A DNA stretch of 64,000 nucleotides from Octopus sinensis (lineage: Eukaryota): positions 1,240,001 through 1,304,000 of the forward strand of contig NC_043006.1 in the NCBI RefSeq assembly GCF_006345805.1. Direction: 5' to 3'. The notes beneath the pieces are model-generated. The model was not told the DNA's origin. It saw only the letters and a program-made list of their open reading frames with translations, and searched no databases. Positions 2,181 through 56,877 of the stretch are shown here, one piece after another. The position numbers and the translations under genes are program-made. Position 1 is the first letter of the stretch. The number at the start of each line of letters is the position of its first letter.

Positions 2181-2430
2181 TTGGCTGAGTGATAAGAAGC
2201 TTGCTTTCCAACCACAGGGTTCTGGGTTCAGTCGCACTGAGTGGCACCTTGAATAAGTGTCGTTTACTATTGCCTCGGGCCGACCAAAGCCTAGTGAGGG
2301 GATTTGGTAGACGGAAACTGAGAGAAACCCGTCGTATATATTTATGTGTGTGTTTTTTGAGTCTGTGTTTGTCCCCTCACCACCACATCGCTTGGCAACC
2401 GATATTGGTATGTTTACATCCCCGTAACTT
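2181..2430 (+). mobile_element. SINE family B, 3'-truncated by the adjoining R4/Dong LINE
   Basis: tggctg.gtg.taagaagcttgc...gggttcagtc...ttggtagacggaaactga...cgtaacttag matches full copies such as 34681-35077. Confidence 0.85.
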
Positions 2431-4604
2431 AGAGGTTCCACTCTCATGGATACTAGAAATTCTCAACACAAATAAATTAACCCCACTACTACTAAAAGAC
2501 ATTAAACATGCAATGGCAAACTGGAAAACTGGTATAACATTAAAAAGTGACTTACAAGTTATTAAAACCTACCCTGTACCCGTAAAAAGAGAGATTTTCC
2601 AGGGATACTCAGTGTCACCCCTGCTTTTCTGCCTGTCTCTGACCCCGCCAACAAACTTGTTAAACGAAACCACCATGGGTTATAGGTGCTATGGACAAAA
2701 ACTAAGCCATTTCCTGTACATGGATGACCTAAAACGTTTCGCTAAAAGCACCATGGAACAGAGAAGCCTTATCAAAACTGTCCAGAATTTCGGCAAAAAC
2801 ATCGGAATTAACATGGCGCTGGGCAAATGTTTCAAAGTCACACTGAGAAGAGGCAAATTATTCAGCACTGAAAACACTGCACTTGGCATAGACACAGAAA
2901 TTAGAGGATTAGACAACAACTACCCATACAAATGTCTAGGAATAGACGAAGCAGCTAAAATGCAACACACAGAAATGAAAGAGAACATTAGGAAAGGGAA
3001 CATTACAGAAGAGTCAGACTAATGTTAAGCAGTGAACTTAATGCTAAAAATAAGATAATAGGGATAAACACGGTAGCCATACCAGTCATAAATTACAGCT
3101 TTAACATAATAAGCTGGAAGATCAGTGAATTGAGAAACCTAGATAGAAAAACCAGAAAACTACTAACAGAGTACCAAAGTCACCACCCCAAAGCAGACGC
3201 AGACAGAATATATCTAACCCGCTGATAAGGAGGCCATGGCCGGATACGGATAGAGAACTACTATAAAATAACAACGGTTGGACTAGCAGAGTACATAGAA
3301 ACAAAGAGTAGAAGACTACTGCGTGTACTAAAGCAACACGAGAAAAAGAAAACTTTTTCTCTGTACACAAGGGGACGACAAAATAGAAAACAGAAACAAC
3401 TACACTGACACACTGACCTCAGATGACAACATAGCATCAATGGTCAGAGAGACAAAAGACAACATGAAAACTGAGTTACAAAAGATACTGAAGAAGGAAT
3501 GGAGAGAAAAATCGCTTCATGGCCAAAACCCTGCAAGGCTTGGCAGAGAGGAAGTGAGCCTAAGTAAAAGCCAACAATGGCTCAAAAGCTCTGGACTGAA
3601 AGCCGAAACGGAAGGACTGATTCTTACTGCACAAAATCAATGCCTGACTACAAACAATTATAAAACCAAAATAATGAAAACAGGCCTCGACACCAAATGC
3701 AGAATGTGCAACCAGCAAAATGAGACAGTTGGTCACATCATCTCGAGCTGTCCAGTCCTTGCCAAACCTGAATATATTGATACAGAAGCAGAGAAATAGT
3801 CAGTTATGTCCACTGGACAATGTGCCAACATTACATCAAAACTGACAACAGGTGGTGTAAGCATATGCCAAGCATGGTACAAGACAACGACCAGGCCGCA
3901 ATCATGTGATATATGTCGCTTCAAACCGACAAAGAAATAAAAGCTAATCGCCCAAACATAATAATCAAGGACTGGGGTAAAAAAAAATCACCTGCTTACT
4001 GATAGACATTGAAGTCACTTCTGATCAAAATAATGTCAAAAAAGAAGAGGAGAAATTGTACAAAGACCTTGAAATTGAAGTATTCAAAATGTGTGGCATG
4101 AAGGTAAAAACAATACCGATAATAATTGGAGCATTGGGAATGATACAAAAACGCATGAACAAAAACGTAGAAGCTATGCTGGGATCTTCAACACGACACA
4201 CCGTCAAAAAAGTAGCCCTGCTAGGAACGGCTCGCACCCTACGCATGACACTATCAATCCAATAAGATAACCTAAACAAAACAAACTACAAACACAAGAC
4301 ACACTCTATACAGCATTTACCCAGTGAAATAAACTTTCAGCGGCAAGCTAGAAAACCATAGCATTACACACTCAACACACAATACAAGCTGTGACACAAC
4401 GAAAGATTGCATCCTGCCTCAAGAGAAAAGAAATTAACACGATACAGTACCGAGAAGAGTTTGCACACTCCCAACAGAACACAAAAAAACACACACAGTG
4501 CTGCACATACCTCAGCAACACAAAGGTGCAGCAGATGATGCAGATGATGCAGATGATGCAGTAGAAATTTACTTCAATCTACCAAATGTTGAGCAGTTAT
4601 ATGT
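2431..4604 (+). mobile_element. R4/Dong-clade non-LTR retrotransposon (RT + REL endonuclease), 5'-truncated and frameshifted
   Basis: Translated fragments IFQGYSVSPLLFCL, HFLYMDDLK, GLKAETEGLILTAQNQ, CRMCNQQNETVGHIISSC, PIIIGALG and KVALLGTARTLR; 3' UTR followed by (TAA)n. Confidence 0.92.
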
Positions 4605-4629
4605 AATAATAATAATATAATAATAATAA

Positions 4630-4670
<41 letters not shown>

Positions 4671-4692
4671 ATAGTAATACTACTACTACTAC

Positions 4693-4727
<35 letters not shown>
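4605..4727. repeat. (TAA)n/(TAG)n microsatellite between R4/Dong copies
   Basis: Directly visible. Confidence 0.95.
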
Positions 4728-5035
4728 TTGATAGCAAAAGGGGCTGATTGCTACCTAACTCAGATACCAGGAAACCCCAAAATGGCAGAAATTCAAAAGA
4801 TAGTGCTCATGGGAACTGCTCATATCCTACTTTCTTTGTAATCTCAAGTTTTAAAACAAACATAATTTTCGTATGTTTTTTTTAGGCATTCACTAGTACA
4901 ACACTAAGTACAAAACCAAATATATGGCACCTTAGGCATAACACCAACATGAACTTCCAACTTATTGTCTCTTGAGGTCTCTGGGTGAAACTTGGAGCCA
5001 GCTTGTGCAAATGTAAAGCAAAAGTCAAACATTGA
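4728..5035 (+). mobile_element. R4/Dong 3' fragment (second subfamily)
   Basis: Translates to IAKGADCYLTQIPGNPKMAEIQKIVLMGTAHIL, homologous to the REL C-terminus; different 3' UTR, followed by (TAA)n at 5036-5106. Confidence 0.8.
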
Positions 5036-5050
5036 ATAATAATAATAATA

Positions 5051-5106
<56 letters not shown>

Positions 5107-5109
<3 letters not shown>

Positions 5110-6495
5110 GATCTTCCAGGGTGACAGCCTATCTCCGTTGCTTTTCGTTATCTGCATGATACCTCTGACTTTGGTACTCAGGAAAATGAACCTGGGTTAC
5201 CAACTAAAGGAAAAATCCCAATTTGAAACTGTATGGCAAAGATGAGACACAAGTGAGTTCCTTGGTGAACATGGCCCACTGTTTTAGTACTGATATTAGA
5301 ATGGAATTTGGACTCAAGAAGTGCGGAGTAACCTACCTAAAAAGGAGCAAGGTATAGTCCGTAGCAGGGATAGCATTACTGAGTAGAGAGACTTGATTAA
5401 GCAAATTGAAACGGAAAGATACAAATACCTTGGTGCAATAGAGTGCAGCGTGATAATGGAAAAGGAAATGAAAGAGCAACTAAGGATGGAGTATTTCTGA
5501 AGACTGGGGTTGGTGCTGCGCTCAAAAGTGACTGGATGGAAAAAAAATCCAAGCAGTTAGCATCACCTCGGTATGGAGCAGGAATTATAAAATGGCAAAA
5601 GAGAGAAACGAAGAAAATGGATACCATGCCCAGAAAAATGTTAACAGTACACGGAGCCTCCACCCTAAGAGTGAAACTGATTGGCTATACTTGTCCAAAA
5701 TAAAGAGTGGGGGAGGTTTGATCAGTTGCCTTGACTGTATCGAAGCAGAGGAAAACAGCCTAGGGTGGTATATAATAAAAGACGAGGAGCCAATGTTAAA
5801 GCACACGAAAAAGGCTGGCGTCATGAAAACTGAAATTTGTGTAACTAAAGGAAGATTTAAACAAGATATGAACAAAGAAAAAAAACGGTATGGCACGTCG
5901 ATAGCGAATGTCCGAAATTGGCACAACGCGAATACAAACGACGCCATGACAATGTGGCAAGAATGATCCATTGAGAGCTCTATGGAAATCACGGCCTACA
6001 AAGAGCAAAGACGTGATATGAGAAAACCCCAGAAGGAGTCGAAGAAAATGAGAACTGCAAAATCCTGTGGGATGTAATGATCTAGAGTGATCACCTGACC
6101 AGACTTTGGAAACCGGACATTGTTGTGGTGAATAAAAAAGAAAGAACATGCATGATTATCGACCTAGCATGCCCTGGTTTACAACAAGATCAATGTGAAA
6201 GAAGAAGAAAAAATAAACAACTGCAACGATTTAAAGTGGGAAGTACGAAGGTTGTGGTCAATGAAGAGTGTAGACGTGATACCAATGGTGTACTTGGAAG
6301 TATCAGCACACAGCTACCAACATGGATGAAAAAGACTGGTGCAAGTGTGAAGGTAGAACACCTACAAAAACCAGTATTGCTTGGAACTGCAAGAATTCTT
6401 GAAGCCTGACCAGTAAACAAGTGTCACCTTCGTCAGCTGGCTGTGGACGGCTGACACTTTCCATCATACCCAGCAAAATAAGCTGAGTTTTCATA
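5107..6495 (+). mobile_element. R4/Dong fragment (third subfamily), degenerate
   Basis: FQGDSLSPLLFVICMIPL, LYLSKIKSGGGLISCLDCIEAEENSL and EHLQKPVLLGTARIL; begins right after a TAA tract. Confidence 0.88.
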
Positions 6496-6499
6496 TAAT

Positions 6500-6840
6500 A
6501 ACAATGACCATGACGACGACGATTACGATGACAACGATGATGATGATGAAGAGGAGGAGGAGGAGGAGGATGAAGTGGAGGAGGAAGTGGAGGAGGAAGA
6601 CGATGACGAAGATGATGACAACGATGATGATGATGAAGAGGAGGAGGAGGAAGAGGGAGAGGAAGACAACGACGAAGATGATGACAACTATGATGATGAT
6701 GAAGAGGATGAAGTGGAGGAGGAGGAGGAGGAGGAAGTGGAGGAGGAGGAAGTGGAGGGGAGGAGGAGGAAGTGGAGGGGAGGAGGATGAGGAAGAGGGG
6801 GAGGAGGAGGGAGGAAGAGGAGGAGGGGAGGAGGAGGATA
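6500..6840. repeat. Compound (GAT)/(GAC)/(GAG) low-complexity repeat
   Basis: Directly visible triplet runs with internal duplicated blocks. Confidence 0.9.
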
Positions 6841-12494: not shown

Positions 12495-13099
12495 ATATAT
12501 GCAATTATATATTAATGAACCCCTTGTAACAACATACGAGACGATCCCTCTTCTCGGTTGCTAATAAACTACCTCAAGCAAAGTTCACCTGATTTGTAAT
12601 GGAAGAACGTATGTGGTTCTTTGACCTAAACCTGATACAAATAACACCAAATTCTTCTTGAAATCTCATAATAGCGTCTTAAAAAGGAAAGCTTACATTA
12701 AAGAAGGTAGTTCTTGTTATACTAAATCTGGATGAAGGCAAAATTGTCGCGCCTAAAATGTCTTTAAGCAGAGTTAATTTGGATTTGGAGCTAAGCAACA
12801 ACTGCAATATAATTCTTGATGTGAACTTCTTCACCAAGTTGTCCCACCCAGCCAATGCCGTCAAGATCGGCGGTTATACTATGGTCTTAGAATTTGAGAT
12901 CTGATTGCAGGAATCACGTTTTATGTATTTCTGTTTAATAATAGCCAACATAAAGAAAGTTAGTTGATAGGCGTAGGAGTGGCTGTGTGCTTACGAACCA
13001 AATGGTTCCGGGTTCAGTCCCACTGCGTGGTACCTTGGGCAAGTGTCTTCTACTATAGCCTCGGGCCGACCAAAGCCTTGTGAGTTGATTTGGTAGACG

Positions 13100-14695
13100 G
13101 GCACTGTCATGGTATTAGCTGTCAGAAGTGAAAGTAGAAAAATCTGACGTCAACTTCGTGTATTTACGTCAGGTTTATACCTTCGTTAATTTACGCCGTT
13201 TATTTACGTACCACTACGCTGTCAGGTTTATAAAACAATTGAAGTTCAGTTTAAAGTTTATAGATAAATACATTTCATTCCATGTTCTGTTTAAACTTTG
13301 TAAATAAATATATTCTTGCATTATTCCTTATTGTTTTTAGAAAAGAAATCACACCAAATCTGCACAAATGACCACCACCGCGATCACATACACCAATCAG
13401 CATGACCAATGACCACTAATGACCACTACTACCACCACCGAAAGTGTAAAAGGAATTAATCACCGCGATATTGCCATCGCCACCGCTACAACAGCAGATA
13501 GTATTAATTGGCTTAAGATGCATGGACTTTTAAATACCCAGAAAATATGTACATCATGTGGAGCTAGCATGAGGGAAGTAGCTAAAAAAATTTGTCGGAT
13601 GGAGTGATATGGTCATGTGGAAGGCCTTGTAGAAAAATGGTTTCAATTAGAAAAGGAAACATTTCTAGAAAATAGTAAATTGAAGTGTGAACAAATTATT
13701 GATATATTATATTATTGGGCAAAAGAAGATTTAGCAAAGGGAATAGCACAGGAATGTCGTATAGCGAATGTAGCCGTAACAGATTGGAGAAATTTTTGCC
13801 GTGATATATGTGCAGAATATTATGTTGCACAAAACATTAAGCTCGGAGGGCCAACCCGAATTGTAGAGATAGATGAAAGCGCGTTTGTTAGAAGAAAATA
13901 TAATGTTGGCCATCGGGTTAAAACGCAGTGGGTTTTTGGCGCTTTGGAAAGGGATACTAGAAGATGTTTTTTAGTGGCAGTGGAAGATCGGACAGCGGAC
14001 ACCCTTTTGCAAATTATAGAAGACCGTATATTGCCTGGTACAACCATAATTTCCGACCTCTGGCGTTCGTATAATACGCTCAATCAGCTGGGATATAGGC
14101 ATTTGACCGTGAATCATTCAATAAATTTTGGTGATGCGGTAACATTTGCCACAACCAACCACATAGAATGTTTATGGAAGCATGTGAAGAATCGCAACAA
14201 AAGAGAAAATGGAACAGCCCGAAATTTACTTCAATCCCATCTCATCGAATTCATGTGGCATTATGAATTTAAGGGCGAAATATTCGGAAAGTTATTGGAG
14301 CAAATTCGACATCTATATCCATGTGTTTGAGACCTTATCCATGTGTTTGAGACCTTAGAGAGTATAAGTATCTACAGAGCATAAGTATCACATTTATTTT
14401 TAAACTTAACTTCAAACTTCATTTGTTTTATATTTTGATAAATTCTCTCTGTTGAAAATTATATTTTATATTCTAAATAATTTGCAATTTCAAAAAATAT
14501 ATTAATTTTGCGTTTTTTAATTTGATAAATTCTATGGAATGATTTTGCGTTTTTTAATTTGATAAATTAATTCAATTTGATAAATTCTACGGAATAATTT
14601 TGCGTTTTTTAATTTGATGAAGGTGGACGAGTGACGTCAGATTGACGTCACACTTTTTTTACTTTCCTCCTGACAGCTAATTCCGTGGTAGTGCC
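13100..14695 (+). mobile_element. Merlin (IS1595/ISXO2-like) DNA transposon, full length
   Basis: Imperfect TIRs (ggcactgtcatggtattagctgtcag versus ggcactaccacggaattagctgtcag, 22/26, similarity extending to about 54 bp); 8-bp TSD GGTAGACG at 13092-13099 and 14696-14703; subterminal tandem repeats at 14504-14618. Confidence 0.93.
13419..14330 (+). pseudogene. Merlin/ISXO2-like DDE transposase, frameshifted near 13590-13620
   Basis: N-terminal Zn ribbon (HGLL...CTSCG...WSC), then VEIDESAF..RKYNVG, WVFGALER, TIISDLWRSY, HLTVNHS and TNHIECLW. Confidence 0.9.
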
Positions 14696-15314
14696 GGTAG
14701 ACGGAAACTGAAAGAAGCTCGTCGTATAAATGTGTTTATATATGTATGTGTGTGTGTATATGTTTGTGTGTCTATGTGTTGTACCCCCTACCAACATTGC
14801 TTGACAACCGATGCTGGTGTGTTTACGTCCCCGTCACCTAGCGATTCGGCAAAAGTGACCGATAGAATAAGTACTAGGCTTACAAAGAATAAGTCCTGGG
14901 GTCGATTTGCTCGACTAAAAGGCGGTGCTACAGCATGGCCACAGTCACATGACTGAAACAAGTAAACGAAAAAGAGTAAGTTGGTTGGTCGGTTGGTTAC
15001 AGGCTTTGTATCGTATAGAGAAAAGGGAAGAGAGAGAGAGAGTGAAAGAGACGTTAGAAGTGCAAGATAAGGGTACATGCGAGGTTGGTGATGGTCAATG
15101 AGTAAATAAACGCTATATACGCATGCGCACACTGAGTAAGAATCAGAAACAGAAAAGGGGGTGATGGAAGAGGAAGAAGGATAAAAGGGGAGGGGGAGTA
15201 AATTTGTTGATAGTCATGGGAAAATTTATATCAATGAGAAATGTGTAAAATTTAATTTTACTTTAACGTAATAAATATTTTTCTTTCGAAAATTACTATT
15301 CATTTCATTATTAA

Positions 15315-22680: not shown

Positions 22681-23412
22681 GAAAGAAAGAAAGAAAAAAA
22701 GAAGGAAGGACGGAAAGAAGGAAAGGGAGAAAAGAAAGAAAGAACGAAAGAAAGAAATGAAAGAAGGAAGGAAAGAAAGAAGGAAGGAAAGGAAGAAAAG
22801 AAAGAAAGAAAGAAAGAAAGAAAGAAATGAAAGAAGGAAGGAAAGAAAGAAGGAAGGAAAGAAAGAAGGAAGGAAAGAAGGAAAGGCACGAAAGAAAGAA
22901 AGAAAGAAAGAAAGAAAAAGAAAGAAGGAAAGGAAAGAAAGAAAGAGGGAAAGAAAGAAAAGAAAGAAAGAAGGAATGAAAAGAAAGAAGGAAAGAAAGA
23001 ACGAAAGAAAGAAAGAACGAAGAAAGAAAGAAAGAGGGAAAGAAAGAAGGAAGGAAGGAAGGAAGGAAAGAAAGAAAGAAACAAAAAATAAAGAAAGAAA
23101 GAAAGAGGAAAGAAAGAAGGAAGAAGGAAGAAGGAAGGAAAAAAAAGAAAGAAAGAAAGAAGAAAAGAAAGAGAAGAAAGAAAGAAAGAAAGAAAGAAAG
23201 AAGGAGGAAGGAAGGAAGAAAGAAGAAAGAAAGAAAGAAAGAAAGAAAGAAGGAAGGAAGGAGGAAGGAAGGAAGGTAGGAAGGAAGGAAGGAAGGAAGA
23301 AAAGAAAGAAGAAAGAAAAGAAAGAAAGAAGAAGAAAGAAAGAAAAAGAAAGAAGAAAGAAAGAAAGAAAGAGAAGAAAGAAATAAAGAAAGAAAGAAAG
23401 AAAGAAAAGAGA
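22681..23412. repeat. About 730-bp polypurine (AAAG/AAGG) tract
   Basis: Directly visible; only scattered pyrimidines. Confidence 0.95.
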
Positions 23413-24900: not shown

Positions 24901-25307
24901 GGAGTAAACACATAAATGTGAAACAAGGTGGAAAAAAGAGTACTCAAATACCAGTGGTAGAGTAATATGCTTTATTTTAAGCAGCAGAAAATTCAACAAA
25001 ATCTGTTGAATTTTGTTGAATTTGTTGAATTTTGTTGAATTTTGTTGAACAGATTTTGTTGAATTTTCTGCTGCTTAAAATAAAGTATATATATATATAT
25101 AGACGCATATATTTGTGTGTGTGTTTGTCCCCCGTCCATCGCTTGACAACCGATGTTGGTTTGTTTTCGTCCCCGTAACTTAGCTGTTCACAAGAGAGAC
25201 CTACAGAATAAGTACTAGGCTTACAAAGAATAAGTCCTGGGGTCGATTTGTTCGGTGCTCCTGCATGACATCAGTCAAATGACTGAAACAAGTGAAAGAA
25301 TAAAAGA
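24683..25307 (+). mobile_element. SINE family B with an insertion in its internal microsatellite
   Basis: 5' half 24683-24840, foreign segment about 24899-25085, 3' half about 25100-25307. Confidence 0.88.
24970..25085. repeat. Perfect 38-bp-arm hairpin with a tandem 10-mer loop
   Basis: 24970-25007 is the exact reverse complement of 25048-25085; the loop is about four copies of gaattttgtt. Confidence 0.92.
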
Positions 25308-26816: not shown

Positions 26817-28087
26817 CAGGGGTTGGACAAAATAATGGAAACATTTAAATTTCAAACAAATTTATTTTAACATGGAGTAGGACCGCTTTTGACAGTAATT
26901 ACAGCTTGAATTCTACAAAGTATGGACTCGTGCAAAGTTTGAATTGTTTTCAAAGGAATTTTTGTCCTTTCTTCAGCTAAAACAGTCTCCAGTTCTTGTA
27001 GTGATGATGGTGGAGGGTATTGACTCCTTACTTGTTTTTCTAAAATGCACCATAAATGTTCAATAATATTGAGATCTGGGGACTGTGGTGGCCAGATAAA
27101 ATGTTCAACTTCTCTAGAATGTTCCTCGTGCTATTCAGTAAAAACTTTGGCTGTGTGAGTTGGTGCATTATCATCCTGAAAGATTGCGTTTCCCTCCGGA
27201 AACAGTTCTGCAACCATAGTATGAATTTGATCAGATAAAATGCTTAGTCGTGACTATTAATTCTGCCATGAAGGGAAACCACTGGGACGGCGGATTTCCA
27301 AGCTATAAGCCCCCACCACAACCACCACCACCAGATCGTCACAGATCCTCCACCATGTTTAACAGTTGAAAGAAAACAGTCTGGGTCAAATGCTTCTTTT
27401 GGCTGTCTCCACTCGTATACTCGGCCGGTGGTCGGAAATAAGGTAAAGGATGACTCGTCCGAGAAAATAACATTCTTCCACTGCTCTAGGGACTAATTCT
27501 GTAGGTTTTTAGTCTACTCTAAACGCTTCGCAACGTTTGTTTTTGAAAGTAGTGGTTTTTTGAATGCAACCTTCCCATGAAATCTGGCTTCGTGCAGCTC
27601 CTGGTGAAGAGTTTTGTGGAAACTGGGTTCTTGAGGTGGTCATTAAGCTCTACAGCAATTTTGGGAGCTGCACTTTTGTGATTATTTCTAACTATTCGCG
27701 TAAGGGTCCGACGGTCCCTATCTAAAAGTTTTGGTTTTCATCCGGAGTTTTGTCTCGACGAGGAAGTTTTTCTCTCCTTCTCAAAAGCTGTTATTACTTT
27801 CGAGACAGTACTTCATACATCAAAAATTTCGGCTGTTTTCGTTATGCTAGCGCTTGCCATACGAACGCCAACAATTTGACCTCTTTGAAAATCCGATAGA
27901 TCTGTCATTTTAATGAATGTTGATTACCTTTTTTCTGATGATATCTGAAAAGAAACAGCAATTTTATCAAAACATATTAAGCAACTCTAATAATAAATCG
28001 AAAAAAATAAAACATGATGGTTTTATAGGTATTTCAAAATTATGATGCTATGATGCTAGATGTTTCCATTAATTTGTCCAACCCCTG
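26817..28087 (-). mobile_element. Tc1-family DNA transposon, full length
   Basis: 27-bp TIRs CAGGGGTTGGACAAAATAATGGAAACA (26/27 match) with TA TSDs at 26815-26816 and 28088-28089. Confidence 0.95.
26867..27908 (-). pseudogene. Tc1 DDE transposase, disrupted
   Basis: MTDLSDFQRGQIVG..., WKNVIFSDES, FQDDNAPTH, WPPQSPDLNIIEHLW and RIQAVITVKSGPTPC*; stops and frameshifts present. Confidence 0.9.
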
Positions 28088-29302
28088 TATATGTATATGT
28101 TTGTCTGTCTGTCTTTGTCCCCCCACCATCACTTCACAACCGATGTTGGTGTGTTTACGTTCTCGTAACTTAGCGGCTCAGCAAAAAACCGATAGAATAA
28201 GTATTAGGCTTACAAAGAATAAGTCCTGTGGTCGATTTGTTCGACTAAAGGCTGTGCTCCAACATGGCCGCAGTCAAATGACTGAAACAAATTAAAGAAT
28301 GAAAGAATAACTTTGATTTACTTAATATTTTCATGGACAGCATAACAATGAAATTCATCCAAAAATTAACCAGAACAAGTTTAATGTAAAAAGTCAGAGA
28401 CATAACCTAATGGAAAATATCTACAATATGCAAATATATGAATATATTGACTGACTTTGTTTCCATCCATTCATCCTAGTCAAGCGCGGACCAATATAAT
28501 TCTTTCATGCCAGACGTCCAGATTAAGCGATGAGGCATAATGTCTGGCTTGAGTTTTAGTCAGATTGGCCCTTGGCTAACTGAAATATCTCATGTCCGTA
28601 CGCCGCGGCGACTACAGACGGTACCATTATTTCACAATCTGAACGGCTTCATCCTGGCCGTTGACAATTTGTAGAGTGTTATTCCGCTCAACATCTCGTG
28701 ATATTCGCCATTGATTCCATAAGTTCACTTGCTGAAATGATTCACATCTATCATACGATTTCTCCGCACCCTGCTTAGAGTGGCTACAAGCTGTGCAACC
28801 CATACCTAGCACCCCGACAAATACTACTACTCTGGTTCAGAGTAGACATGGGAACAATAATGGTTATGGGGTGGTTCCACACTCCTCAAAAGCCTGGAAC
28901 TCTCGAACCAGGATATCACTACCGGATACAGTTTAAAATTCATACCAAGGTAATATGTGGCAGGGGATACTTTTGTTTATGGAGCACTGAGAATTTATTG
29001 TTAGTCACTAGTGGACTGTGGGCTACTAGTTATGATTGCTGATATAGGGAAAAACCTCATAGTCGAAACAAAACTCCGGAAAAAAACCCAAACTTTCAGA
29101 TAGGGACAGTCGGACTCTAACGCGAATTATTAGAATGGATCACAAAAGTACAGCTCCCAAAATTGTCAGTAACCGCCTCAGGTCAGGATGCAGATTCTTA
29201 CTATGATTCATAAAAAAATCTTTCTCTCTCTCTCCCTCTCCCTCTCTCTCTCCCTCTCTCTCTCCCCATCTCTCTCTCCCTCTCTCTCCCTCTCTATCCC
29301 TC

Positions 29303-33474: not shown

Positions 33475-33620
<146 letters not shown>

Positions 33621-34544: not shown

Positions 34545-35150
34545 TTATATAATTATGAATATATATGTATATATTCACCCATGATAGATCGGTAACCACT
34601 ACACACATTTTTCTCTATCTCCTTGTTTCTTTCTGTGGAAGAGCGTAGGCTCGAAATGTTAAAGATTTTTTCAATTCCCGAGGCGCAGGAGTGGCTGTGT
34701 GGTAAGTAGCTTGCTAACCAACCACATGGTTCTGGGTTCAGTCCCACTGCGTGGCATCTTGGGCAAGTGTCTTCTGCTATAGCCCCGGGCCGACCAATGC
34801 CTTGTGAGTGGATTTGGTAGATGGAAACTGAAAGAAGCTTGTCGTATATATGTATATATATGTGTGTGTATGTGTTTGTGTGATTGTCCCCCTAGCATTG
34901 CTTGACAAGCGATGCTGGTGTGTTTACGTCCCCGTCACTTAGCGGTTCGGCAAAACAGACCGATAGAATAAGTACTGGGCTTACAAAGAATAAGTCCCGG
35001 GGTCGATTTGCTCGACTAAAGGCGGTGCTCCAGCATGGCCGCAGTCAAATGACTTAAACAAGTAAAAGAGTAAAGAGTTATACTAATACATCTGGTTGTT
35101 TTCTACACCACCTGTCTTCGTCTTTTGTTTTTCTCGTGAATTCTCCCTAT
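34545..35150 (+). mobile_element. PLE terminal repeat (same family as 24190-24536) split by a family B SINE
   Basis: ctgtggaagagcgtaggctcgaaatgtt...ttcccg [SINE] ttatactaatacatc...tgtcttcgtcttttg, then (TA)n. Confidence 0.65.
34681..35077 (+). mobile_element. SINE family B, full length
   Basis: aggcgcaggagtggctgtgtggtaag...gggttcagtccc...gtaaaagagtaaagag. Confidence 0.95.
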
Positions 35151-39639: not shown

Positions 39640-39860
39640 AGAAGCGATGTTGAAGCGGGAGAAATTTGAACTCAGAACGTAAACAAACGTAACGAATACT
39701 GATTTCAAATTTTGTCGCAAGGCCAGCAATTTTGGAGGAGAAGATAAGTCGATTACATCGACCCCAGGTTTTTATTTAACGGGTTTTTATTTTATCGGCC
39801 ATAAAAGTTTGAAAGGTAAAGTCGACCTCGGCGGAATTTGAACTCAGAACGTAAACATAA
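39640..39860 (-). mobile_element. SINE family A fragments
   Basis: Two copies of aatttgaactcagaacgtaa plus gtcgattacatcgacccc. Confidence 0.7.
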
Positions 39861-39866
39861 GTATAT

Positions 39867-40295
39867 AGGCGCAGGTATGGCTGTGTGATTGTGTGATTAA
39901 AGGTGAAGTTGTAACTGCGTGGTAAGAGGCTTGCTCCCCAATCACATGATTCAGTTCTACTTTGTGGTACCTTTGGCAAGTGTCTTCTACTCCAACCGCG
40001 GACAGGCCAAAGTCTTGTGAGTGAATTTGGTAAACGGAAACTGAAAGAAGCCTGCCGTATATGGTGCCTGTGTGCCTTTGAGTCTGTGTTTTCCCCCACC
40101 ACCACTTGGCAACTGGTATTGGTGTGCTTATGTCTCCGTAACTCAGTTCTTGGGCAAAAGTGACCGATAGGATATGTACCAGGCTTTAAAAAGTTATTAT
40201 AAGTCCTGGGGTCGATTCGTTCAACTAAAGTTCTTCAAGGCAGTGCCCCAGTATGGCCACGGTCTAATGACCGAAACAAATAAACAGTCAAAGAT
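39867..40295 (+). mobile_element. SINE family B
   Basis: aggcgcaggtatggctgtgtg...gaaactgaaagaagcc...gtcctggggtcgattcgttc. Confidence 0.9.
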
Positions 40296-52337: not shown

Positions 52338-52667
52338 GTGTGTGTGTGTGTGTGTGCATAAGTGCTAGTATGGCTTGCCTACATCCCCGGCAATATTTGT
52401 GAAATTAGAACACCTAGGAAATTGATTTCAACACTTAAAATAATCCACTAATAAACAGAATCATTAGCAGGTAGAGAAAATAACAAATAAAACATTCTCA
52501 CACACAAAATCTTGTATGTAACTCTAAAGGATCACAATCCCAATATTTATAAATGACTGCGAAATAGCGCCATCAACACAACTAGAATCGAACACAGAAG
52601 CATCAGTAAAACATATTGGATAAATTATTTACACTCGACGGATATTCGTCCTCATCTTGTTGTTGTT

Positions 52668-52713
52668 AACACAACGTTTCGGCTGATATACCCTCCAGCC
52701 TTCTTCAGGTGTC
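52668..52713 (-). ncRNA. Minimal type I hammerhead motif (PLE type)
   Basis: Reverse complement: gacac-CTGAAGA-aGGCTG..CAGCC-GAAAC-GTT-gtgtt. Confidence 0.65.
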
Positions 52714-52727
52714 TTGGGGAAATTTCG

Positions 52728-55310
52728 CCATATGGAAGGAAAATAACATAAACAAAGACTTGGATACAGCAATGAACCCTAATAAACTAGCTAACGTACG
52801 AAGATATATTCTCAACGCAAAAAAAGATATCAGAAATAGAAATAGAACATTTAAAAGAAAAAATACATCAGGAAAATGTAGATAGAAGCCACACAACAAT
52901 GCCAAATAATATAAACACTGAGATAGTAAAACACGAAGACAAACGTAACATTTTCAACAAAAACGATGTAAACAAAAAACAACAAACCCATACCGTAAGG
53001 ATGCATAATAATGCACGACAAGCAGCAAGCCAAAACACGACAGACAAACATACGAATGAGAAAAAAAGCGACACAAATCTAAAACCTGGAAACAACGAAG
53101 GGGAGCCTAATGATGATACTATAAAAAGTAAAATAATCAAAGAACTGAAAAACACAGATCTCAAAATGGACCACCGACCATACCTCCCAAATATCAAAAT
53201 ATACAAAAATAACATCAATTATAAACAGCATAAAACTAGCCGTCACAGAACTAATAGCCACTGAAACAAATAGCGATATCACTGAGCTAAATGACTTAGT
53301 ATATGCAGCAGCCACTGCAGCCACAAAAGAAGCTGGATGCTCCCTCAAACCCATCCAAACAGGAGTACCACCACCCAAACAAACCCTGTGGATAAATAAC
53401 ATTAAAAAAATACAAAAAATGAGAAAAGATCTGTCGATTCTTAATGAAATCAGTAGACAATCAACGCTACTAAGCAACAAAAAGAAAACAAAAATACTGT
53501 GCAAATACAACATCACAGAAAAAGATTTACCTGAGATAAAAGAAAAGCTAAAGCAAGATATCCTTGCCAAAGCACAAAGGATCCGCCGGTATGAGAAACG
53601 CCAACGTTTCTTTGAAAAGAACAAACAGTTCAACTCCAACCCCAAAAAGTTCTACCAAGAACTGGGCAAAAATAAAATAGACATCACTGCAGCACCAACG
53701 GCAGAAGAAGTGGAAGAATTCTGGAAAGAAATATGGTCGGGGAAAGAACGACGAAAAAAAAAAGGAGTATTAAAACAACAAACTCAGCATCTGAGCAACT
53801 TTGGACCCCATAACAACTGAAGTGGTCACCCAGGTACTGCAAAGACTAAGCAACTGGAAGGCACCTGGGCATGACAAGATCCCCAACTTCTGGTTGAAAT
53901 ATCTAACAGGAATGCACAAAAAGCTGGCTGAAAACTTTAACAACATACTGGCAGAGCCAGAGACAATGCCTGAATGGCTCACGAAGGGGAAAGCCATCTT
54001 AATTCCCAAATCCAATGAGACAGCAAAACCAGAAAACTACAGGCCTATAACCTATCTCCCTAAACTGTACAAAGCATTCACTGCAGTAATATCACAAAGA
54101 TTAAACAAGCACCTGGACGAAAACAACCTGTTTCCAGAAGAGCAGAAAGGATGCCGCAATGGCTCATATGGCTGTAAAGATCAACTAATGATCAATAAAG
54201 CCATAACTGAAGACAGCCACAGAAAGAAGAAAGGCCTCAGTATGGCCTGGATCGACTACAGAAAGGCGTTTGATAGCATCCCCCACACATGGAGGAGGAG
54301 GAGGAGAAGAAGAAGAAGAAGAAGAAGAAGAAGAAGAAGAAGAAGAAGAAGAAGAAGAAGAAGAAGAAGAAGAAGAAGAAGAAGAAGAAGAAGAAGAAGA
54401 AGAAGAAAACACAAAAAAGGTATAAAGCAAATGAAATCAAAACTAAATCTAGAACAGTAACAGACCATTATAAAACGATGGCAAGGAACACCCTTTCATG
54501 GCAAGTACTGGACTAAACTAAATGCAAAAGAAATAGACAAAGAAAAATCCCAGCAATGGTTGAGAAGCTCAGGACTCAAAGCAGAAACAGAGGGATTTTT
54601 AATTGCAGCACAAGACCAAAGCCTCCCCACCAGAAATTACCAAAAACATGTGATGAAAAGAAATATAACAAGTAACTGCAGAATATGTGGAGATGGACAA
54701 GAAACAATAAATCATATTATCTCTGGCTGCCCAGTCCTGGCTAAGAAGGAATATATTCACAGACACGACAGAGTTGGGACCTACATACACTGGAAGCTAT
54801 GCCAACATTATGGAATAACAACAGAAGAAAGATGGTGTAGGCACACACCAGAAAAGGTCACAGAAAACGAGAAAGCAACCATACTCTGGGATATGCCAAT
54901 ACACACAGATAGAGAAATTAAGGCCAACAGACCAGATATAGTTGTCAGAGATCATGAAGAAAAAAAATGCTTTCTAATTGATGTATCAATACCAGCAGAT
55001 GACAAGGTGTCTCTTAAAGAAATGGAGAAACTCTCAAAATACAAAGACCTGGAAATAGAGGTAACTAGAATGTGGAATCTAAAAACAGAAACAATTCCTA
55101 TCATAGTAGGTGCATTAGGCATGATAAAAAAATATTCAGACAAATACATAACAAAAACACCAGGACTTACAAACACATATAACATACAGAAAATTGCACT
55201 ACTAGGCACTGTCCACATCCTACGCAGAACACTTTCAATACAATAACCATCAGAGCATCACAACAAATCACAGCACATACCCAAGCACGTTATAAAAATA
55301 AAACTACTGA

Positions 55311-55312
<2 letters not shown>
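52728..55312 (+). mobile_element. R4/Dong retrotransposon, near full length, RT core deleted
   Basis: IWKENN...KLANVRRYILN, WKAPGHDKIPNFWLK, NYRPITYLP, EEQKGCR..GCKDQL, WIDYRKAFDSIPHTW, then KAETEGFLIAAQDQ, CRICG..ETINHIISGC, RHDRVG, RPDIVV..LIDVSIP; (TAA)n at 55313-55373. Confidence 0.93.
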
Positions 55313-55376
<64 letters not shown>

Positions 55377-55423
55377 TCGAAAAATACCTTAGGAATGAGA
55401 ACTCAGGTTCGAAATTTCCCCAA

Positions 55424-55469
55424 GACACCTGACGAAGGCTGCAGGGTATATCAGCCGAAACGTTGTGTT
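55424..55469 (+). ncRNA. Minimal type I hammerhead motif (PLE type)
   Basis: gacac-CTGACGA-aGGCTG..CAGCC-GAAAC-GTT-gtgtt; palindromic loopless helix III (AACGTT). Confidence 0.65.
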
Positions 55470-56133
55470 AACAACTAATAAGATGAGGACAAATATCCGT
55501 CAAATGTAAATAATGTAAATAATGTACATAATTCCTCATCTCTTAAATATAGAACTATATTGGATAAACTCAATAACAATATCCAGAAAAGATCAGATTA
55601 GCATTTTGGAATAAAGATGAATCACTCATTTGTCGGTTTACACACAACCTAAGAAACAAGAAAACTTATTCAACCAATTTTTATGTAATTTACTGTTCGT
55701 CGTACGTTATAAATAGATATTGCTAACGACCCTAGATTTCGCGAATTCCCTCTTCATCATCTCAGATAACTACATGCAAGTAATAATAGGTAACAGGAAG
55801 TCGATTTTCATCTTCAGTGACGGTCTATTGATAACAAACGGAAAGCAGATGCCTTTGATGTAAGCATGAGCATCAAGAATTCAAGAGAAATTTCAAATCT
55901 AGTAGGATTATATATTTTATGCTTAATATAAAATCCATTCCGCACTTTTAGCAGATTTTATGGAGATGACGGTCTATTGATCTCCAAAAATGTAAACGGG
56001 TAACCAGCAGATATGTTCAGAAAGGACCTAATCAAACAATTCACCGTTACACACCTAAATTGTTAACCTCAAAACAATCAATTTCTTACATTAACGCTCA
56101 ACTGTAACATGGAAAATTCTTACCTTTTATCAA

Positions 56134-56877
56134 CCCTTTTGTTACCGTGTTTCTGTTGAAATACACTGTCTTTGCAAATAATGAAGAATTTAGTAAACTA
56201 AATTCATTGTTATTAAGTTGGTGTTTGATTCATAAATTAACGTGGAATTTTGATGGGAAGTCTAAATTTAGATCACTTTAAAACTTTCGTTATCATATTT
56301 GTGTTGAAATCCTCTGCTTTTCTTTCCATTACTTTAGGAAATAAGGAAGAATTTAGTGATTACTAGCAGTATCGCCCGGCGTTGCTCGGGTTTGTAAGGG
56401 AAATAACTATATAAGCATTTTTAGAGAGTTATAGCCAAAAAATAGCAAAAAAATGCATTAAAAATGGAAAGAAAATGATGATAATTTTTTTTTTAATCGT
56501 TGACTCATCGTAGACATTTTTAGAGAGTTACTTCCCTTATATAATAGCGAAAAAATGCATTAAAATGGAAAAAAATGATGGTAAATTATTTTTAAAATCG
56601 TAGACTCATCGTAGACGCGCGCTAATACCCAGAAGGGCTCGATATGAATCCCTACTATAAGATACCCGGTTTTGGTTAAACTGCACCGCAAAATGTGGGA
56701 GTAGTTAGGAATCTAAATCGTAGGAGACAGACAGACACACAACTTGACTTTTATATATAATGATTAATCTGGTGTTTGAAGCACATTAACGTGAACTTTT
56801 GATGAAAGGTCTTAATTTGGATCACTCCAAACAGTAAACTTGTATCATACAGCCAGGACAAGCTTGTATCAAAAGGG
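56134..56877. mobile_element. piggyBac-like MITE with internal duplication, interrupted by a Helitron
   Basis: Termini cccttttgttac / gtatcaaaaggg; degenerate TTAA-like flanks (tcaa, ttgt); duplicated segment at about 56215-56285 and 56768-56830. Confidence 0.45.
56363..56763 (-). mobile_element. Non-autonomous Helitron (401 bp)
   Basis: Minus strand: A|TC...subterminal hairpin (cccggcgttgctcggg on + at 56375-56390)...CTAG|T; internal tandem duplication of about 100 bp. Confidence 0.8.

What the first reader, a model, noticed from the sequence alone, without database searches (positions are those of the whole stretch)
52613..55568. Chimeric retroelement: R4/Dong cargo bracketed by inverted hammerhead-bearing Penelope-type termini and inserted as one unit
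Seen in sequence: ATATTGGATAAA, then a 103-bp inverted terminal repeat, a 5'-truncated R4/Dong ORF, (TAA)n, the full terminal repeat and ATATTGGATAAA again. Both terminal repeats carry a minimal hammerhead. Established: PLE insertions often show an inverted partial terminal repeat at the 5' end and encode minimal hammerheads, and R4/Dong elements target TAA repeats. Inference: an R4/Dong copy landed in the TAA tract upstream of a PLE terminal repeat, and the fused RNA was then retrotransposed by PLE machinery, so one retroelement class transduced another. No TAA is present at the R4 5' junction, which fits this model. However, the R4 copy at 2431 also lacks 5' TAA, so that clue alone is weak.
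Basis: partly seen in the sequence, partly recalled or inferred. Interest (0 to 1): 0.85.

Follow-up and report, generated by a model that had tools for sequence, protein, structure and literature searches.

The report
Dong retroelement nested in hammerhead repeat
In what is probably an octopus genome, a nearly full-length but broken R4/Dong retrotransposon lies between two inverted copies of a short hammerhead-bearing repeat. It most likely got there by an ordinary targeted insertion into that repeat's own TAA tract, not because one retroelement class carried the other.

Summary
There is a 12-bp direct repeat, a 103-bp inverted arm, an R4/Dong body, (TAA)20 and a 181-bp terminal repeat (TR). 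Both arms carry a minimal type-I hammerhead motif. I add four points.

- **The R4 is almost full length.** It lacks only the 5'UTR and about 20 codons, but has a 965-bp internal deletion, three frameshifts and a stop.
- **TR is a dispersed octopus repeat.** Its family unit is a tRNA-like head, a TAA-like microsatellite and TR. Two copies without R4 show this, and one of them has the same duplication / inverted arm / microsatellite / TR layout.
- **The junction recurs.** A second locus, shared by O. sinensis and O. vulgaris, has the same R4-3'UTR/(TAA)n/TR junction with a different R4 breakpoint. Its R4 part is not the closest relative of this one.
- **Dong elements target (TAA)n.** The window itself holds three R4 copies chained through TAA tracts.

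Best explanation (about 0.6): a short Penelope-type insertion, later hit in its TAA tract by a Dong element. Co-mobilisation (about 0.27) is not excluded: no TAA remains at the R4 5' junction, and the age comparison is not significant. A genome-wide census and the orthologous locus would decide; neither could be obtained here.

The parts
52613..52624 (.). Left copy of the 12-bp direct repeat ATATTGGATAAA (target-site duplication; effective length 7-12 bp)
   Evidence: D9; chance estimate; border ambiguity
52625..52727 (-). Left arm: an inverted, 5'-truncated copy of the terminal repeat (TR positions about 35-142). It ends in the short form GTAAATAAT and lacks the 39-bp tail.
   Evidence: (I1, I2)
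52668..52713 (-). Minimal type-I hammerhead motif in the left arm: helix I GACAC/GUGUU, core CUGAAGA, one extra A, helix II of 6 bp, GAAA, palindromic CG, then U-U at the cleavage position
   Evidence: descriptor scan; MFE fold
52728..55314 (+). R4/Dong-type non-LTR element, nearly full length (from about codon 21 of the ORF to the end of the 3'UTR) but dead. It has frameshifts near 52815, 53225 and 53800, a stop at 54458, a 965-bp RT deletion and a 34-bp 3'UTR deletion.
54002..54292 (+). N-terminal half of the reverse-transcriptase domain (RVT_1 profile positions 1-93 of 205)
54293..54407 (.). (AGG)n(AGA)n microsatellite lying where 965 bp of RT sequence (L005 positions 283-1247) are missing
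54461..55246 (+). Open C-terminal reading frame with the CCHC (zf-RVT) and restriction-like endonuclease region; 95% identical at protein level to the intact relative P0125
55315..55374 (+). (TAA)20, perfect: the R4 3' tail merged with (or replacing) the TAA-like tract that precedes TR in the repeat family
55375..55556 (+). Right arm: a direct copy of the terminal repeat (TR) from its constant 5' border CATCGAAAAATA to the long 3' end
55424..55469 (+). Minimal type-I hammerhead motif in the right arm (core CUGACGA, helix II of 5 bp)
55518..55556 (+). 39-bp 3' 'tail', present on the right arm only. It is also present in O. sinensis copy A and in the inverted arm of L007.
   Evidence: PMC8557442
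55557..55568 (.). Right copy of the 12-bp direct repeat
   Evidence: D9

Best explanation
I propose two successive, ordinary retrotransposition events at one site.

**Step 1 (inferred from the anatomy).** A short non-autonomous, hammerhead-bearing retroelement inserted here. Its family unit is a tRNA-like head, a TAA-like microsatellite and the about 145-185-bp TR module. The insertion has the Penelope-type signature: a 5'-truncated direct copy that reached into the microsatellite, an inverted 5'-truncated copy of the 3' module placed upstream, a 39-bp tail at one end only, and a 7-12-bp target duplication.

**Step 2 (inferred).** An active R4/Dong element, whose endonuclease targets (TAA)n, inserted into the TAA tract between the two arms, in the orientation that the tract dictates. 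Its own (TAA)n tail fused with the tract. Whatever lay between the inverted arm and the R4 5' end was consumed or deleted at the 5' junction.

**Later decay.** The R4 copy then lost 965 bp of RT at an AGA microsatellite and 34 bp of 3'UTR, and acquired three frameshifts and one stop.

The hammerheads are motif-level predictions. Nothing here shows that they cleave.
For: 1. **The TAA-like tract is intrinsic to the TR family.** Two R4-free copies show it. O. sinensis copy A has a tRNA-like head, (AAC)n(AAT)n and TR. L007 has a head remnant sharing the 12-mer GGGCATATGGCG, an A/T-rich tract and TR. The border TAA|CAT(CG)AAAATA is the same in the window, copy A and L007; in copy B about 6 extra nucleotides lie between the tract and this border.
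2. **L007 shows the same architecture without any R4.** It reads: 17-mer direct repeat (15 of 17 matching), inverted TR arm with the tail, microsatellite, direct TR.
3. **Dong targets (TAA)n in insects, molluscs and cnidarians** (PMC7998251). In this window three R4 copies are chained through TAA tracts: 2435-4262, 4737-4829 and 5111-6400. Copy 2 is flanked by TAA on both sides.
4. **Copy 1 of that chain abuts a SINE with no 5' TAA**. A missing 5' TAA therefore also occurs at an R4 5' junction outside any TR composite.
5. **The R4 parts of the two R4/TR loci are not monophyletic.** The window's is 96.9% identical to L005, an intact 684-aa ORF, and 86.6% to copy B. The junctions therefore most likely arose independently, unless every R4 of this family carries TR.
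6. **R4 and TR have the same orientation in both loci**, as strand-specific TAA targeting predicts.
7. **The R4 looks no older than the arms.** Its private substitutions are at most 1.9% (15 of 783), with a mixed codon-position pattern of 2/5/8. The arms differ by 2.9% per arm.
8. **Both families are recently active in O. vulgaris.** Dong-R4 has 1129 near-full-length recent insertions and Penelope 329 (PMC13282606).
Against: - No TAA unit and no head remnant is left between the inverted arm and the R4 5' end. The junction is sharp at 52727|52728. This model needs either an insertion at the very edge of the tract or a target deletion. Copy B also lacks 5' TAA.
- The age comparison is not significant (Fisher p 0.26-0.28; p 0.09 with the estimated neutral part).
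- No allele or orthologue with the R4-free state of this locus was obtained.
- No autonomous Penelope-like element carrying this TR was found, so 'Penelope-type' rests on architecture and the hammerhead motif only.
Confidence: 0.6

Rival explanations
1. Co-mobilisation. An RNA running from an R4/Dong copy through its (UAA)n tail into a downstream TR was reverse-transcribed from the TR 3' end by Penelope-type machinery. The RNA could be a read-through transcript of a source locus where R4 sits upstream of TR, or a cDNA made by template switching from TR RNA onto an R4 RNA. The inverted arm, R4, (TAA)n and TR were then inserted together in one event.
For: - One duplication encloses everything.
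- The inverted arm abuts the R4 5' end directly, with no TAA or head remnant.
- A second locus has the same 3' junction and a different R4 breakpoint, again with no 5' TAA.
- The two arms have similar numbers of derived changes, 5 and 3, and the R4 private divergence is statistically compatible with the same age.
- PLEs are reported to retrotranspose foreign transcripts in trans (PMC8557442).
- Dong RNAs are processed from co-transcripts (PMC3774820). I infer from this that read-through into downstream DNA is plausible.
Against: - It needs an extra step on top of the same R4-into-TAA event at a source locus.
- The R4 point estimate is younger than the arms (at most 1.9% against 2.9% per lineage), whereas this model predicts equal or older.
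- The window's R4 groups with an intact autonomous element rather than with the other R4/TR locus, so there is no sign of a chimeric lineage.
- Pol III transcripts from the tRNA-like head could not span 3.5 kb of R4.
- No second copy carrying this R4's private lesions is known.
Confidence: 0.27
2. TR is the genuine 3' end of this particular R4/Dong subfamily, which would then have an internal TAA tract in its 3'UTR. The head-(TAA)n-TR elements would be its partner SINEs. The locus would be a single R4 insertion made by R4's own machinery.
For: Both copies of this R4 subfamily that can be read past their TAA tract (the window and copy B) continue into TR. The TR 5' border is constant. The Logan contigs of intact relatives stop inside the TAA run, so they cannot contradict this.
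Against: - An 80%-identical relative ends in (TAA)4 followed by unrelated DNA (L002).
- The three other R4 copies in the window end in TAA-type tracts without TR.
- As far as I know, an inverted duplicated 3' arm and a one-sided tail are Penelope hallmarks, and neither is described for restriction-like-endonuclease LINEs (for the Penelope side).
- The hammerhead is a Penelope/retrozyme feature, and TR relatives occur as 129-bp tandem arrays without any R4.
- Peptide searches found almost no TR-derived ORFs, which is unexpected if every R4 copy carried TR. This point is weak.
Confidence: 0.05
3. R4-driven 3' transduction. An R4 transcript that read through into a downstream TR was inserted by R4's own reverse transcriptase at a non-TAA site. 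The inverted arm arose by an aberrant second priming event.
For: A single duplication encloses R4 and TR. The duplication contains ATAA, which is weakly TAA-like.
Against: - The target is not a TAA repeat.
- Twin priming inverts upstream sequence; it does not duplicate the 3' end.
- The same inverted-arm-plus-tail layout occurs in L007 with no R4 at all.
Confidence: 0.03

Closest known systems
Penelope-like element (PLE) insertions and their min-HHR-bearing pseudo-LTRs (Cervera & de la Pena 2014, PMC4209133; Craig et al. 2021, PMC8557442)
   Same: An inverted 5'-truncated copy lies upstream of the direct copy, a 30-40-bp tail is present at one end only, and a flanking duplication encloses the unit. 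[quoted passage not shown]
   Different: No PLE reverse transcriptase / GIY-YIG ORF is present in the composite, the window or the related loci. The repeat is the 3' module of a SINE-like unit (tRNA-like head plus TAA-like microsatellite). No autonomous partner with this terminus was identified.
Dong (Bombyx mori) and other R4-clade non-LTR retrotransposons
   Same: Single ORF with RT followed by a CCHC and restriction-like endonuclease region. A (TAA)n 3' end. Serial insertion into TAA tracts is visible in this window. Dong-R4 is reported as abundant and recently active in Octopus.
   Different: Clade membership was not tested by phylogeny. This copy lacks its 5' end, where Dong and R4 carry an HDV-like ribozyme. 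It has lost half of its RT. No TAA is left at its 5' junction.
Metazoan non-LTR retrozymes and hammerhead-bearing SINE-like elements (Cervera & de la Pena 2020, PMC7229834; Li et al. 2026 preprint, 10.64898/2026.07.22.740005)
   Same: Small non-autonomous units with type-I hammerheads, thought to derive from PLE terminal regions. A relative of TR forms a 129-bp tandem array (L009).
   Different: In the octopus loci TR is dispersed and single-copy, or present as inverted pairs, not in tandem. It is joined to a tRNA-like head through a microsatellite.
LINE-1 transduction and template-switch chimeric retrocopies (for example U6-L1 chimeras; named from my own knowledge, not checked here)
   Different: Nothing here shows that the R4 travelled with TR. 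The same layout follows from a targeted nested insertion.

Membership tests
Penelope-like element (autonomous) | ORF with a TERT-like reverse transcriptase and a GIY-YIG endonuclease | tested here: not met
   The only RT in the composite is R4-type. No PLE-like ORF was seen among the window ORFs or the L004 ORFs.
Penelope-like element (insertion architecture; non-autonomous derivative) | Inverted 5'-truncated copy adjacent to the 5' end of the direct copy, forming flanking inverted repeats | tested here: met
   Arms 52625-52727 and 55410-55517 are about 93% identical. The same layout occurs in L007.
Penelope-like element (insertion architecture; non-autonomous derivative) | 30-40-bp tail extension present at one end only | tested here: met
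   The 39 bp at 55518-55556 are absent from the left arm. They are present in copy A and in the inverted arm of L007, and absent from copy B and from the direct copy of L007.
Penelope-like element (insertion architecture; non-autonomous derivative) | Sequence identity of the terminal repeat to the terminus of an autonomous PLE in the same genome | not testable with these tools
   No octopus PLE library or whole genome was searchable. Pattern scans of three collections found nothing.
Hammerhead ribozyme, minimal type I (PLE-type min-HHR) | Conserved core CUGANGA ... GAAA ... UH with helices I and II in register, an extra nucleotide before 10.1, G10.1-C11.1 and a palindromic 15.2-16.2 | tested here: met
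   The descriptor hits only the TR copies and gives 0 hits in 200 resamples. The MFE fold forms helices I and II.
Hammerhead ribozyme, minimal type I (PLE-type min-HHR) | Covariation supporting the helices | tested here: inconclusive
   The stems are invariant among the octopus copies. There is one compensatory change in helix II, U-A to C-G, against the related 129-bp unit of L009 (read by eye).
Hammerhead ribozyme (Rfam models) | Match to an Rfam hammerhead covariance model | tested here: not met
   No hammerhead match was found, even at E up to 10. The related tandem units of L009 are also missed, so the models appear blind to this minimal form.
Hammerhead ribozyme | Self-cleavage | not testable with these tools
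   This needs in vitro transcription of monomeric and dimeric constructs.
[quoted passage not shown] | Single ORF: reverse transcriptase followed by a CCHC motif and a restriction-like (PD-D/ExK) endonuclease | tested here: met
   RVT_1 E 2e-12. zf-RVT E 2.6e-5, which is below Pfam's cut-off. The motifs CRICGDGQETINHIISGC and RPDIVV...IDVS...K are read in the translation. The copy is colinear with the 1124-aa relative P0126.
[quoted passage not shown] | (TAA)n at the 3' end and insertion into (TAA)n | tested here: met
   (TAA)20 follows the 3'UTR, and relatives end the same way. There is a chain of R4 copies through TAA tracts at 2435-6838. No TAA is present at this copy's 5' junction.
[quoted passage not shown] | Phylogenetic placement of the RT within the R4 clade | not tested
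   Only unnamed homologues were retrieved. The assignment rests on architecture, TAA association and the literature on octopus repeats.
[quoted passage not shown] | HDV-like ribozyme at the 5' end | tested here: inconclusive
   Rfam gives no match, but this copy lacks its 5'UTR, so the feature could not be present.
Transduction / chimeric retrocopy (co-mobilised passenger) | One target duplication around passenger plus driver, and no target remnant at the internal junction | tested here: met
   The same outcome is also expected from a nested insertion with loss of the upstream TAA.
Transduction / chimeric retrocopy (co-mobilised passenger) | Several loci sharing the passenger's private lesions but with different duplications | not testable with these tools
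   Only one other R4/TR locus was reachable (copy B). Its R4 part is a different, older copy.
Metazoan non-LTR retrozyme | Head-to-tail tandem array of hammerhead units | tested here: not met
   There is no tandem TR in the window or in L004/L006. A relative forms a 129-bp x 2.7 array in L009.

The most novel reading that the evidence does not exclude
TR may be a 3' 'rider' module. Penelope-type reverse transcription would start at TR and run on into whatever TAA-tailed retroelement RNA lies upstream, either by read-through or by template switching. One retroelement class would then copy and re-insert members of another class, Dong LINEs and a tRNA-like SINE. This locus would be such a 3.5-kb cross-class retrocopy.
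Probability: 0.27. Interest if true: 0.75.

Novelty: new member of a known kind. Interest (0 to 1): 0.4.

Why it matters
If the nested reading is right, the locus is an ordinary product of two known behaviours: the Penelope-type inverted/direct insertion and Dong's TAA targeting. It is mainly a warning. Recurrent 'chimeric' junctions between a microsatellite-specific LINE and any element that carries that microsatellite do not show co-mobilisation.

There is a modest positive result. The work describes a hammerhead-bearing, SINE-like repeat family in octopuses, made of a tRNA-like head, a TAA-like tract and a Penelope-type tail. Its internal microsatellite acts as a landing pad for Dong elements, and one copy supplies the first coding exon of an O. 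sinensis gene isoform.

If co-mobilisation were shown, it would be, to my knowledge, a first case of Penelope machinery retro-copying a LINE of another class.

Tried and rejected
- **Rfam.** Gathering and E-value modes on the window, L007 and L009 gave no hammerhead. I rejected this as evidence of absence, because clear minimal motifs and tandem units are also missed.
- **Exact-pattern scans** for the TR core in JGI metagenomes (two scans), GTDB genomes and IMG/VR gave 0 hits.
- **Literature search** for the motif sequence gave 0 hits.
- **Six-frame TR peptide search** found one protein, P0121. That hit opened the O. sinensis and O. vulgaris loci.
- **Search with the R4 N-terminal region.** The candidate list was swamped by low-complexity words, and only three distant relatives were returned.
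- **Relative age test** of the R4 against the arms was not significant.
- **Search for a target duplication around copy B.** No clean duplication was found. Its 5' side abuts the intact terminus of another repeat.
- **Host exon to fetch the orthologous locus.** No convincing exon was found in the window, so the empty-site test could not be run.
- **Rejected: TR inserted into the tail of a pre-existing R4.** The duplication encloses the inverted arm on the far side of the R4, which this cannot explain.
- **Rejected: twin-priming inversion.** The inverted piece duplicates the 3' end rather than upstream sequence.
- **tRNA gene in copy A.** ARAGORN finds none. The head is only tRNA-like by eye.
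Full report
**1. Observation**

- ATATTGGATAAA lies at 52613-52624 and again at 55557-55568.
- An inverted repeat has arms at 52621-52727 and 55410-55517.
- (TAA)20 at 55315-55374 is 100% pure.
- Between them lies an A-rich coding body. Its pieces hit RVT_1 (E 2e-12, profile positions 1-93 only) and zf-RVT.

A self-BLAST shows that the terminal repeat (TR) occurs nowhere else in the 64 kb. The two arms differ by 6 substitutions and 1 indel over about 103 bp. A 12-mer match at these borders has a chance of about 6e-5, even allowing 400 offset pairs.

**2. The hammerheads**

Rfam finds no hammerhead at gathering score, or at E up to 10. Read by hand, both arms carry, on their own sense strand: GACAC-CUGA(C/A)GA-A-GGCUG...CAGCC-GAAA-CG-UU|GUGUU.

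This is the 'min-HHR' of Penelope-like elements described by Cervera and de la Pena (PMC4209133). Its features are:
- a G10.1-C11.1 pair;
- a short helix I;
- a two-nucleotide palindrome in place of helix III, so that only a dimer could form an active helix III.

I wrote a descriptor encoding those features. It hits only the two arms in the window, copy A in O. sinensis and its O. vulgaris orthologue, and nothing in 200 Markov resamples of the window. The minimum-free-energy fold forms helices I and II. A related 129-bp tandem unit from another organism (L009) has C-G where the octopus copies have U-A in helix II, which is one compensatory change. Rfam misses those units too. The motif is therefore real. 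Cleavage is untested.

**3. The R4/Dong body**

The C-terminal ORF (54461-55246) has close relatives:
- 90% with P0001;
- 82% with P0002;
- 95% with P0125, an intact 684-aa ORF.

Their contigs show that the family's 3'UTR ends ...AAAATAAAACTACTGA followed by TAA repeats.

L005 shows that the window copy has lost 965 bp of RT, replaced by (AGG/AGA)n at 54293-54407. It has also lost 34 bp of 3'UTR.

Against a 1124-aa full-length relative (P0126), the window aligns from residue about 20 (window 52721-52825, E 3e-6) and is colinear to the end. The copy is therefore nearly full length and lacks only the 5'UTR and about 20 codons. It has frameshifts near 52815, 53225 and 53800 and a stop at 54458. 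R4 homology starts within 1-2 nt of the end of the inverted arm, with no filler and no TAA.

**4. What TR is**

A six-frame peptide query of TR hit the N-terminus of an Octopus sinensis protein (P0121). The window therefore probably comes from an octopus. Fetching that gene gave 47 kb of O. sinensis (L004) and the orthologous 36 kb of O. vulgaris (L006). These are 97.6% identical over their longest collinear block, 7.5 kb. They hold two more TR copies.
- **Copy A.** It consists of a tRNA-like palindromic head (ARAGORN calls no tRNA), then (AAC)n(AAT)n, then TR with the 39-bp tail. It supplies the start codon and first residues of isoform X2.
- **Copy B.** It consists of about 230 bp of R4 3' end, a degenerate TAA/TGA tract, and a TR with internal deletions and the short 3' end.

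A search of 1.84 billion representative proteins with a 33-residue TR peptide led to two further loci.
- **L007/L008**. From left to right: a 17-mer direct repeat (15 of 17 matching), an inverted TR arm with the tail, about 45 bp sharing GGGCATATGGCG with the head of copy A, an A/T-rich TAA-like tract, and a direct TR. There is no R4.
- **L009.** A 129-bp x 2.7 tandem array of a related hammerhead unit.

From these I conclude that TR is the 3' module of a dispersed, non-autonomous, SINE-like family. Its unit is head, then TAA-like microsatellite, then TR. It inserts with the Penelope-type signature described by Craig et al. (PMC8557442): an inverted 5'-truncated copy and a 30-40-bp tail at one end only. 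No autonomous Penelope ORF was seen in any sequence in hand.

**5. Border detail**

The long 3' ends of three copies read GAACT(A/G)TA(T/C)T. The first 5 nt of the right-hand 'TSD' may therefore be element terminus or priming microhomology, which puts the duplication at 7-12 bp.

**6. Dong targeting in this genome**

Dong inserts into (TAA)n in insects, molluscs and cnidarians (PMC7998251). Dong-R4 is one of the most recently active families in O. vulgaris (PMC13282606). In the window, 2435-6838 is a chain of three R4 copies:
- R4 copy 1 (2435-4262), followed by a TAA tract at 4604-4727;
- R4 copy 2, a short fragment (4737-4829), followed by a TAA tract at 5035-5108;
- R4 copy 3 (5111-6400), followed by a degenerate TAA-derived tail.

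Copy 1 abuts a SINE with no 5' TAA.

**7. Nested insertion or co-mobilisation?**

The duplication encloses the arm, the R4, the TAA tract and TR. Either the R4 was part of the inserted cDNA, or it entered later between the arm and TR.

For in-situ nesting:
- The TAA-like tract is intrinsic to the family (copy A, L007), so it is a ready Dong target.
- The same architecture exists without R4 (L007).
- R4 and TR share orientation in both R4/TR loci, as strand-specific targeting predicts.
- The window's R4 is 96.9% identical to an intact autonomous copy but only 86.6% to copy B's R4. The two junctions therefore most likely arose independently.

For co-mobilisation:
- The sharp arm|R4 junction has no TAA or head remnant.
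- Copy B shows the same lack of 5' TAA.

The age test does not decide.
- Window-private substitutions in the R4 C-terminus are 15 of 783 (codon positions 2/5/8), plus 2 of 70 in the UTR.
- L005-private changes are 1/0/10 across the three codon positions, which indicates purifying selection on that lineage.
- The arms differ by 6 of 206 sites in total, that is 2.9% per arm.
- The Fisher p value is 0.26-0.28, or 0.09 if only the estimated neutral part is counted.

The point estimates (R4 at most 1.9%, arms 2.9%) lean towards a younger R4. Polarising the arm differences with copies A and B gives 5 derived changes on the right arm and 3 on the left, consistent with both arms having one origin.

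I weight the explanations as follows:
- in-situ nesting about 0.6;
- co-mobilisation about 0.27;
- TR as this R4 subfamily's own 3' end about 0.05 (against it: L002 and the three other R4 copies end without TR);
- R4-driven transduction about 0.03.

**8. Limits**

- No whole octopus genome could be searched by DNA. Collection scans for TR found nothing.
- No host exon was found with which to fetch the orthologous locus.
- The species of the window and of the Logan and ENA contigs is unknown.
- R4-clade membership rests on architecture, not phylogeny.

**9. Verdict**

The most likely reading is a nested, target-specific insertion. That is ordinary in kind, though it sits in a previously undescribed hammerhead-bearing repeat family.

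Noticed in passing
window 2435-6838: Three R4/Dong copies of other subfamilies are chained head to tail through TAA tracts: 2435-4262, a 93-bp C-terminal fragment at 4737-4829, and 5111-6400. The oldest tail has degenerated into (GAT/GAG)n at about 6500-6838. This shows serial Dong insertion into TAA tracts in this genome.
   Followed up: partly
L004 9752-10160 (O. sinensis CM016884.1) and L006 about 12560-12783 (O. vulgaris): A TR copy, hammerhead motif included, supplies the start codon and first ~33 residues (MRTQVRNFPKTPEEGWRVYQPKRCVNN...) of LOC115224785 isoform X2. A retroelement module has been exonised.
   Followed up: partly
L009 3030-3379 (ENA ERZ21867824 ctg121048l): A 129-bp x 2.7 tandem array (98% identical units) carries a hammerhead related to TR. 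It is translated in the databases as repeated ~42-aa 'proteins' (P0131, P0133, P0134). It looks like a non-LTR retrozyme array; the organism is unknown.
   Followed up: partly
window 56364-56760; L004 6425-6800 and 7580-7650: A roughly 400-bp repeat has a sharp terminus ...CCGGGCGATACTGCTAGT and an internal 101-bp tandem duplication (window 56416-56616). In O. sinensis the same terminus abuts the 5' end of the R4 fragment of copy B. Its class is unknown.
   Followed up: partly
window 13608-14327 (+): A 240-aa open frame matches the ISXO2/IS1595-type DDE transposase domain (E 5e-18). It is probably a Merlin-type DNA transposon remnant.
   Followed up: no
window 26870-27492 (-): Tc1/mariner-type transposase remnants (DDE_3, E 1e-6).
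   Followed up: no
window 22681-23407: A very long (GAAA)n microsatellite of about 181 units. The window is unusually rich in simple repeats overall (77 TRF rows in 64 kb).
   Followed up: no
window 33482-33620 and flank to 33700: A (TTA)46 tract has no recognisable R4 next to it. On one side lies a short palindrome (GGGTTAAC...GGTTAACCC).
   Followed up: no
window 2181-2430, 14681-14953, 24980-25270, 28029-28292, 34556-34891, 39847-40185: Several copies of one SINE-like repeat, recognised only through similar spurious ORF translations. One copy directly abuts the 5' end of R4 copy 1.
   Followed up: no
L003 480-774 (ENA ERZ23326556 NODE_90699): An R4 C-terminal fragment is joined to G+C-rich sequence unlike the rest of the contig. 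It is probably an assembly chimera.
   Followed up: no
L004 9768-9929: The tRNA-like head of copy A is itself a 69-nt-arm palindrome: an inverted copy of its 3' half plus the start of the microsatellite, then the direct head. This could mean the head-plus-tail part once inserted on its own with an inverted partial copy.
   Followed up: partly
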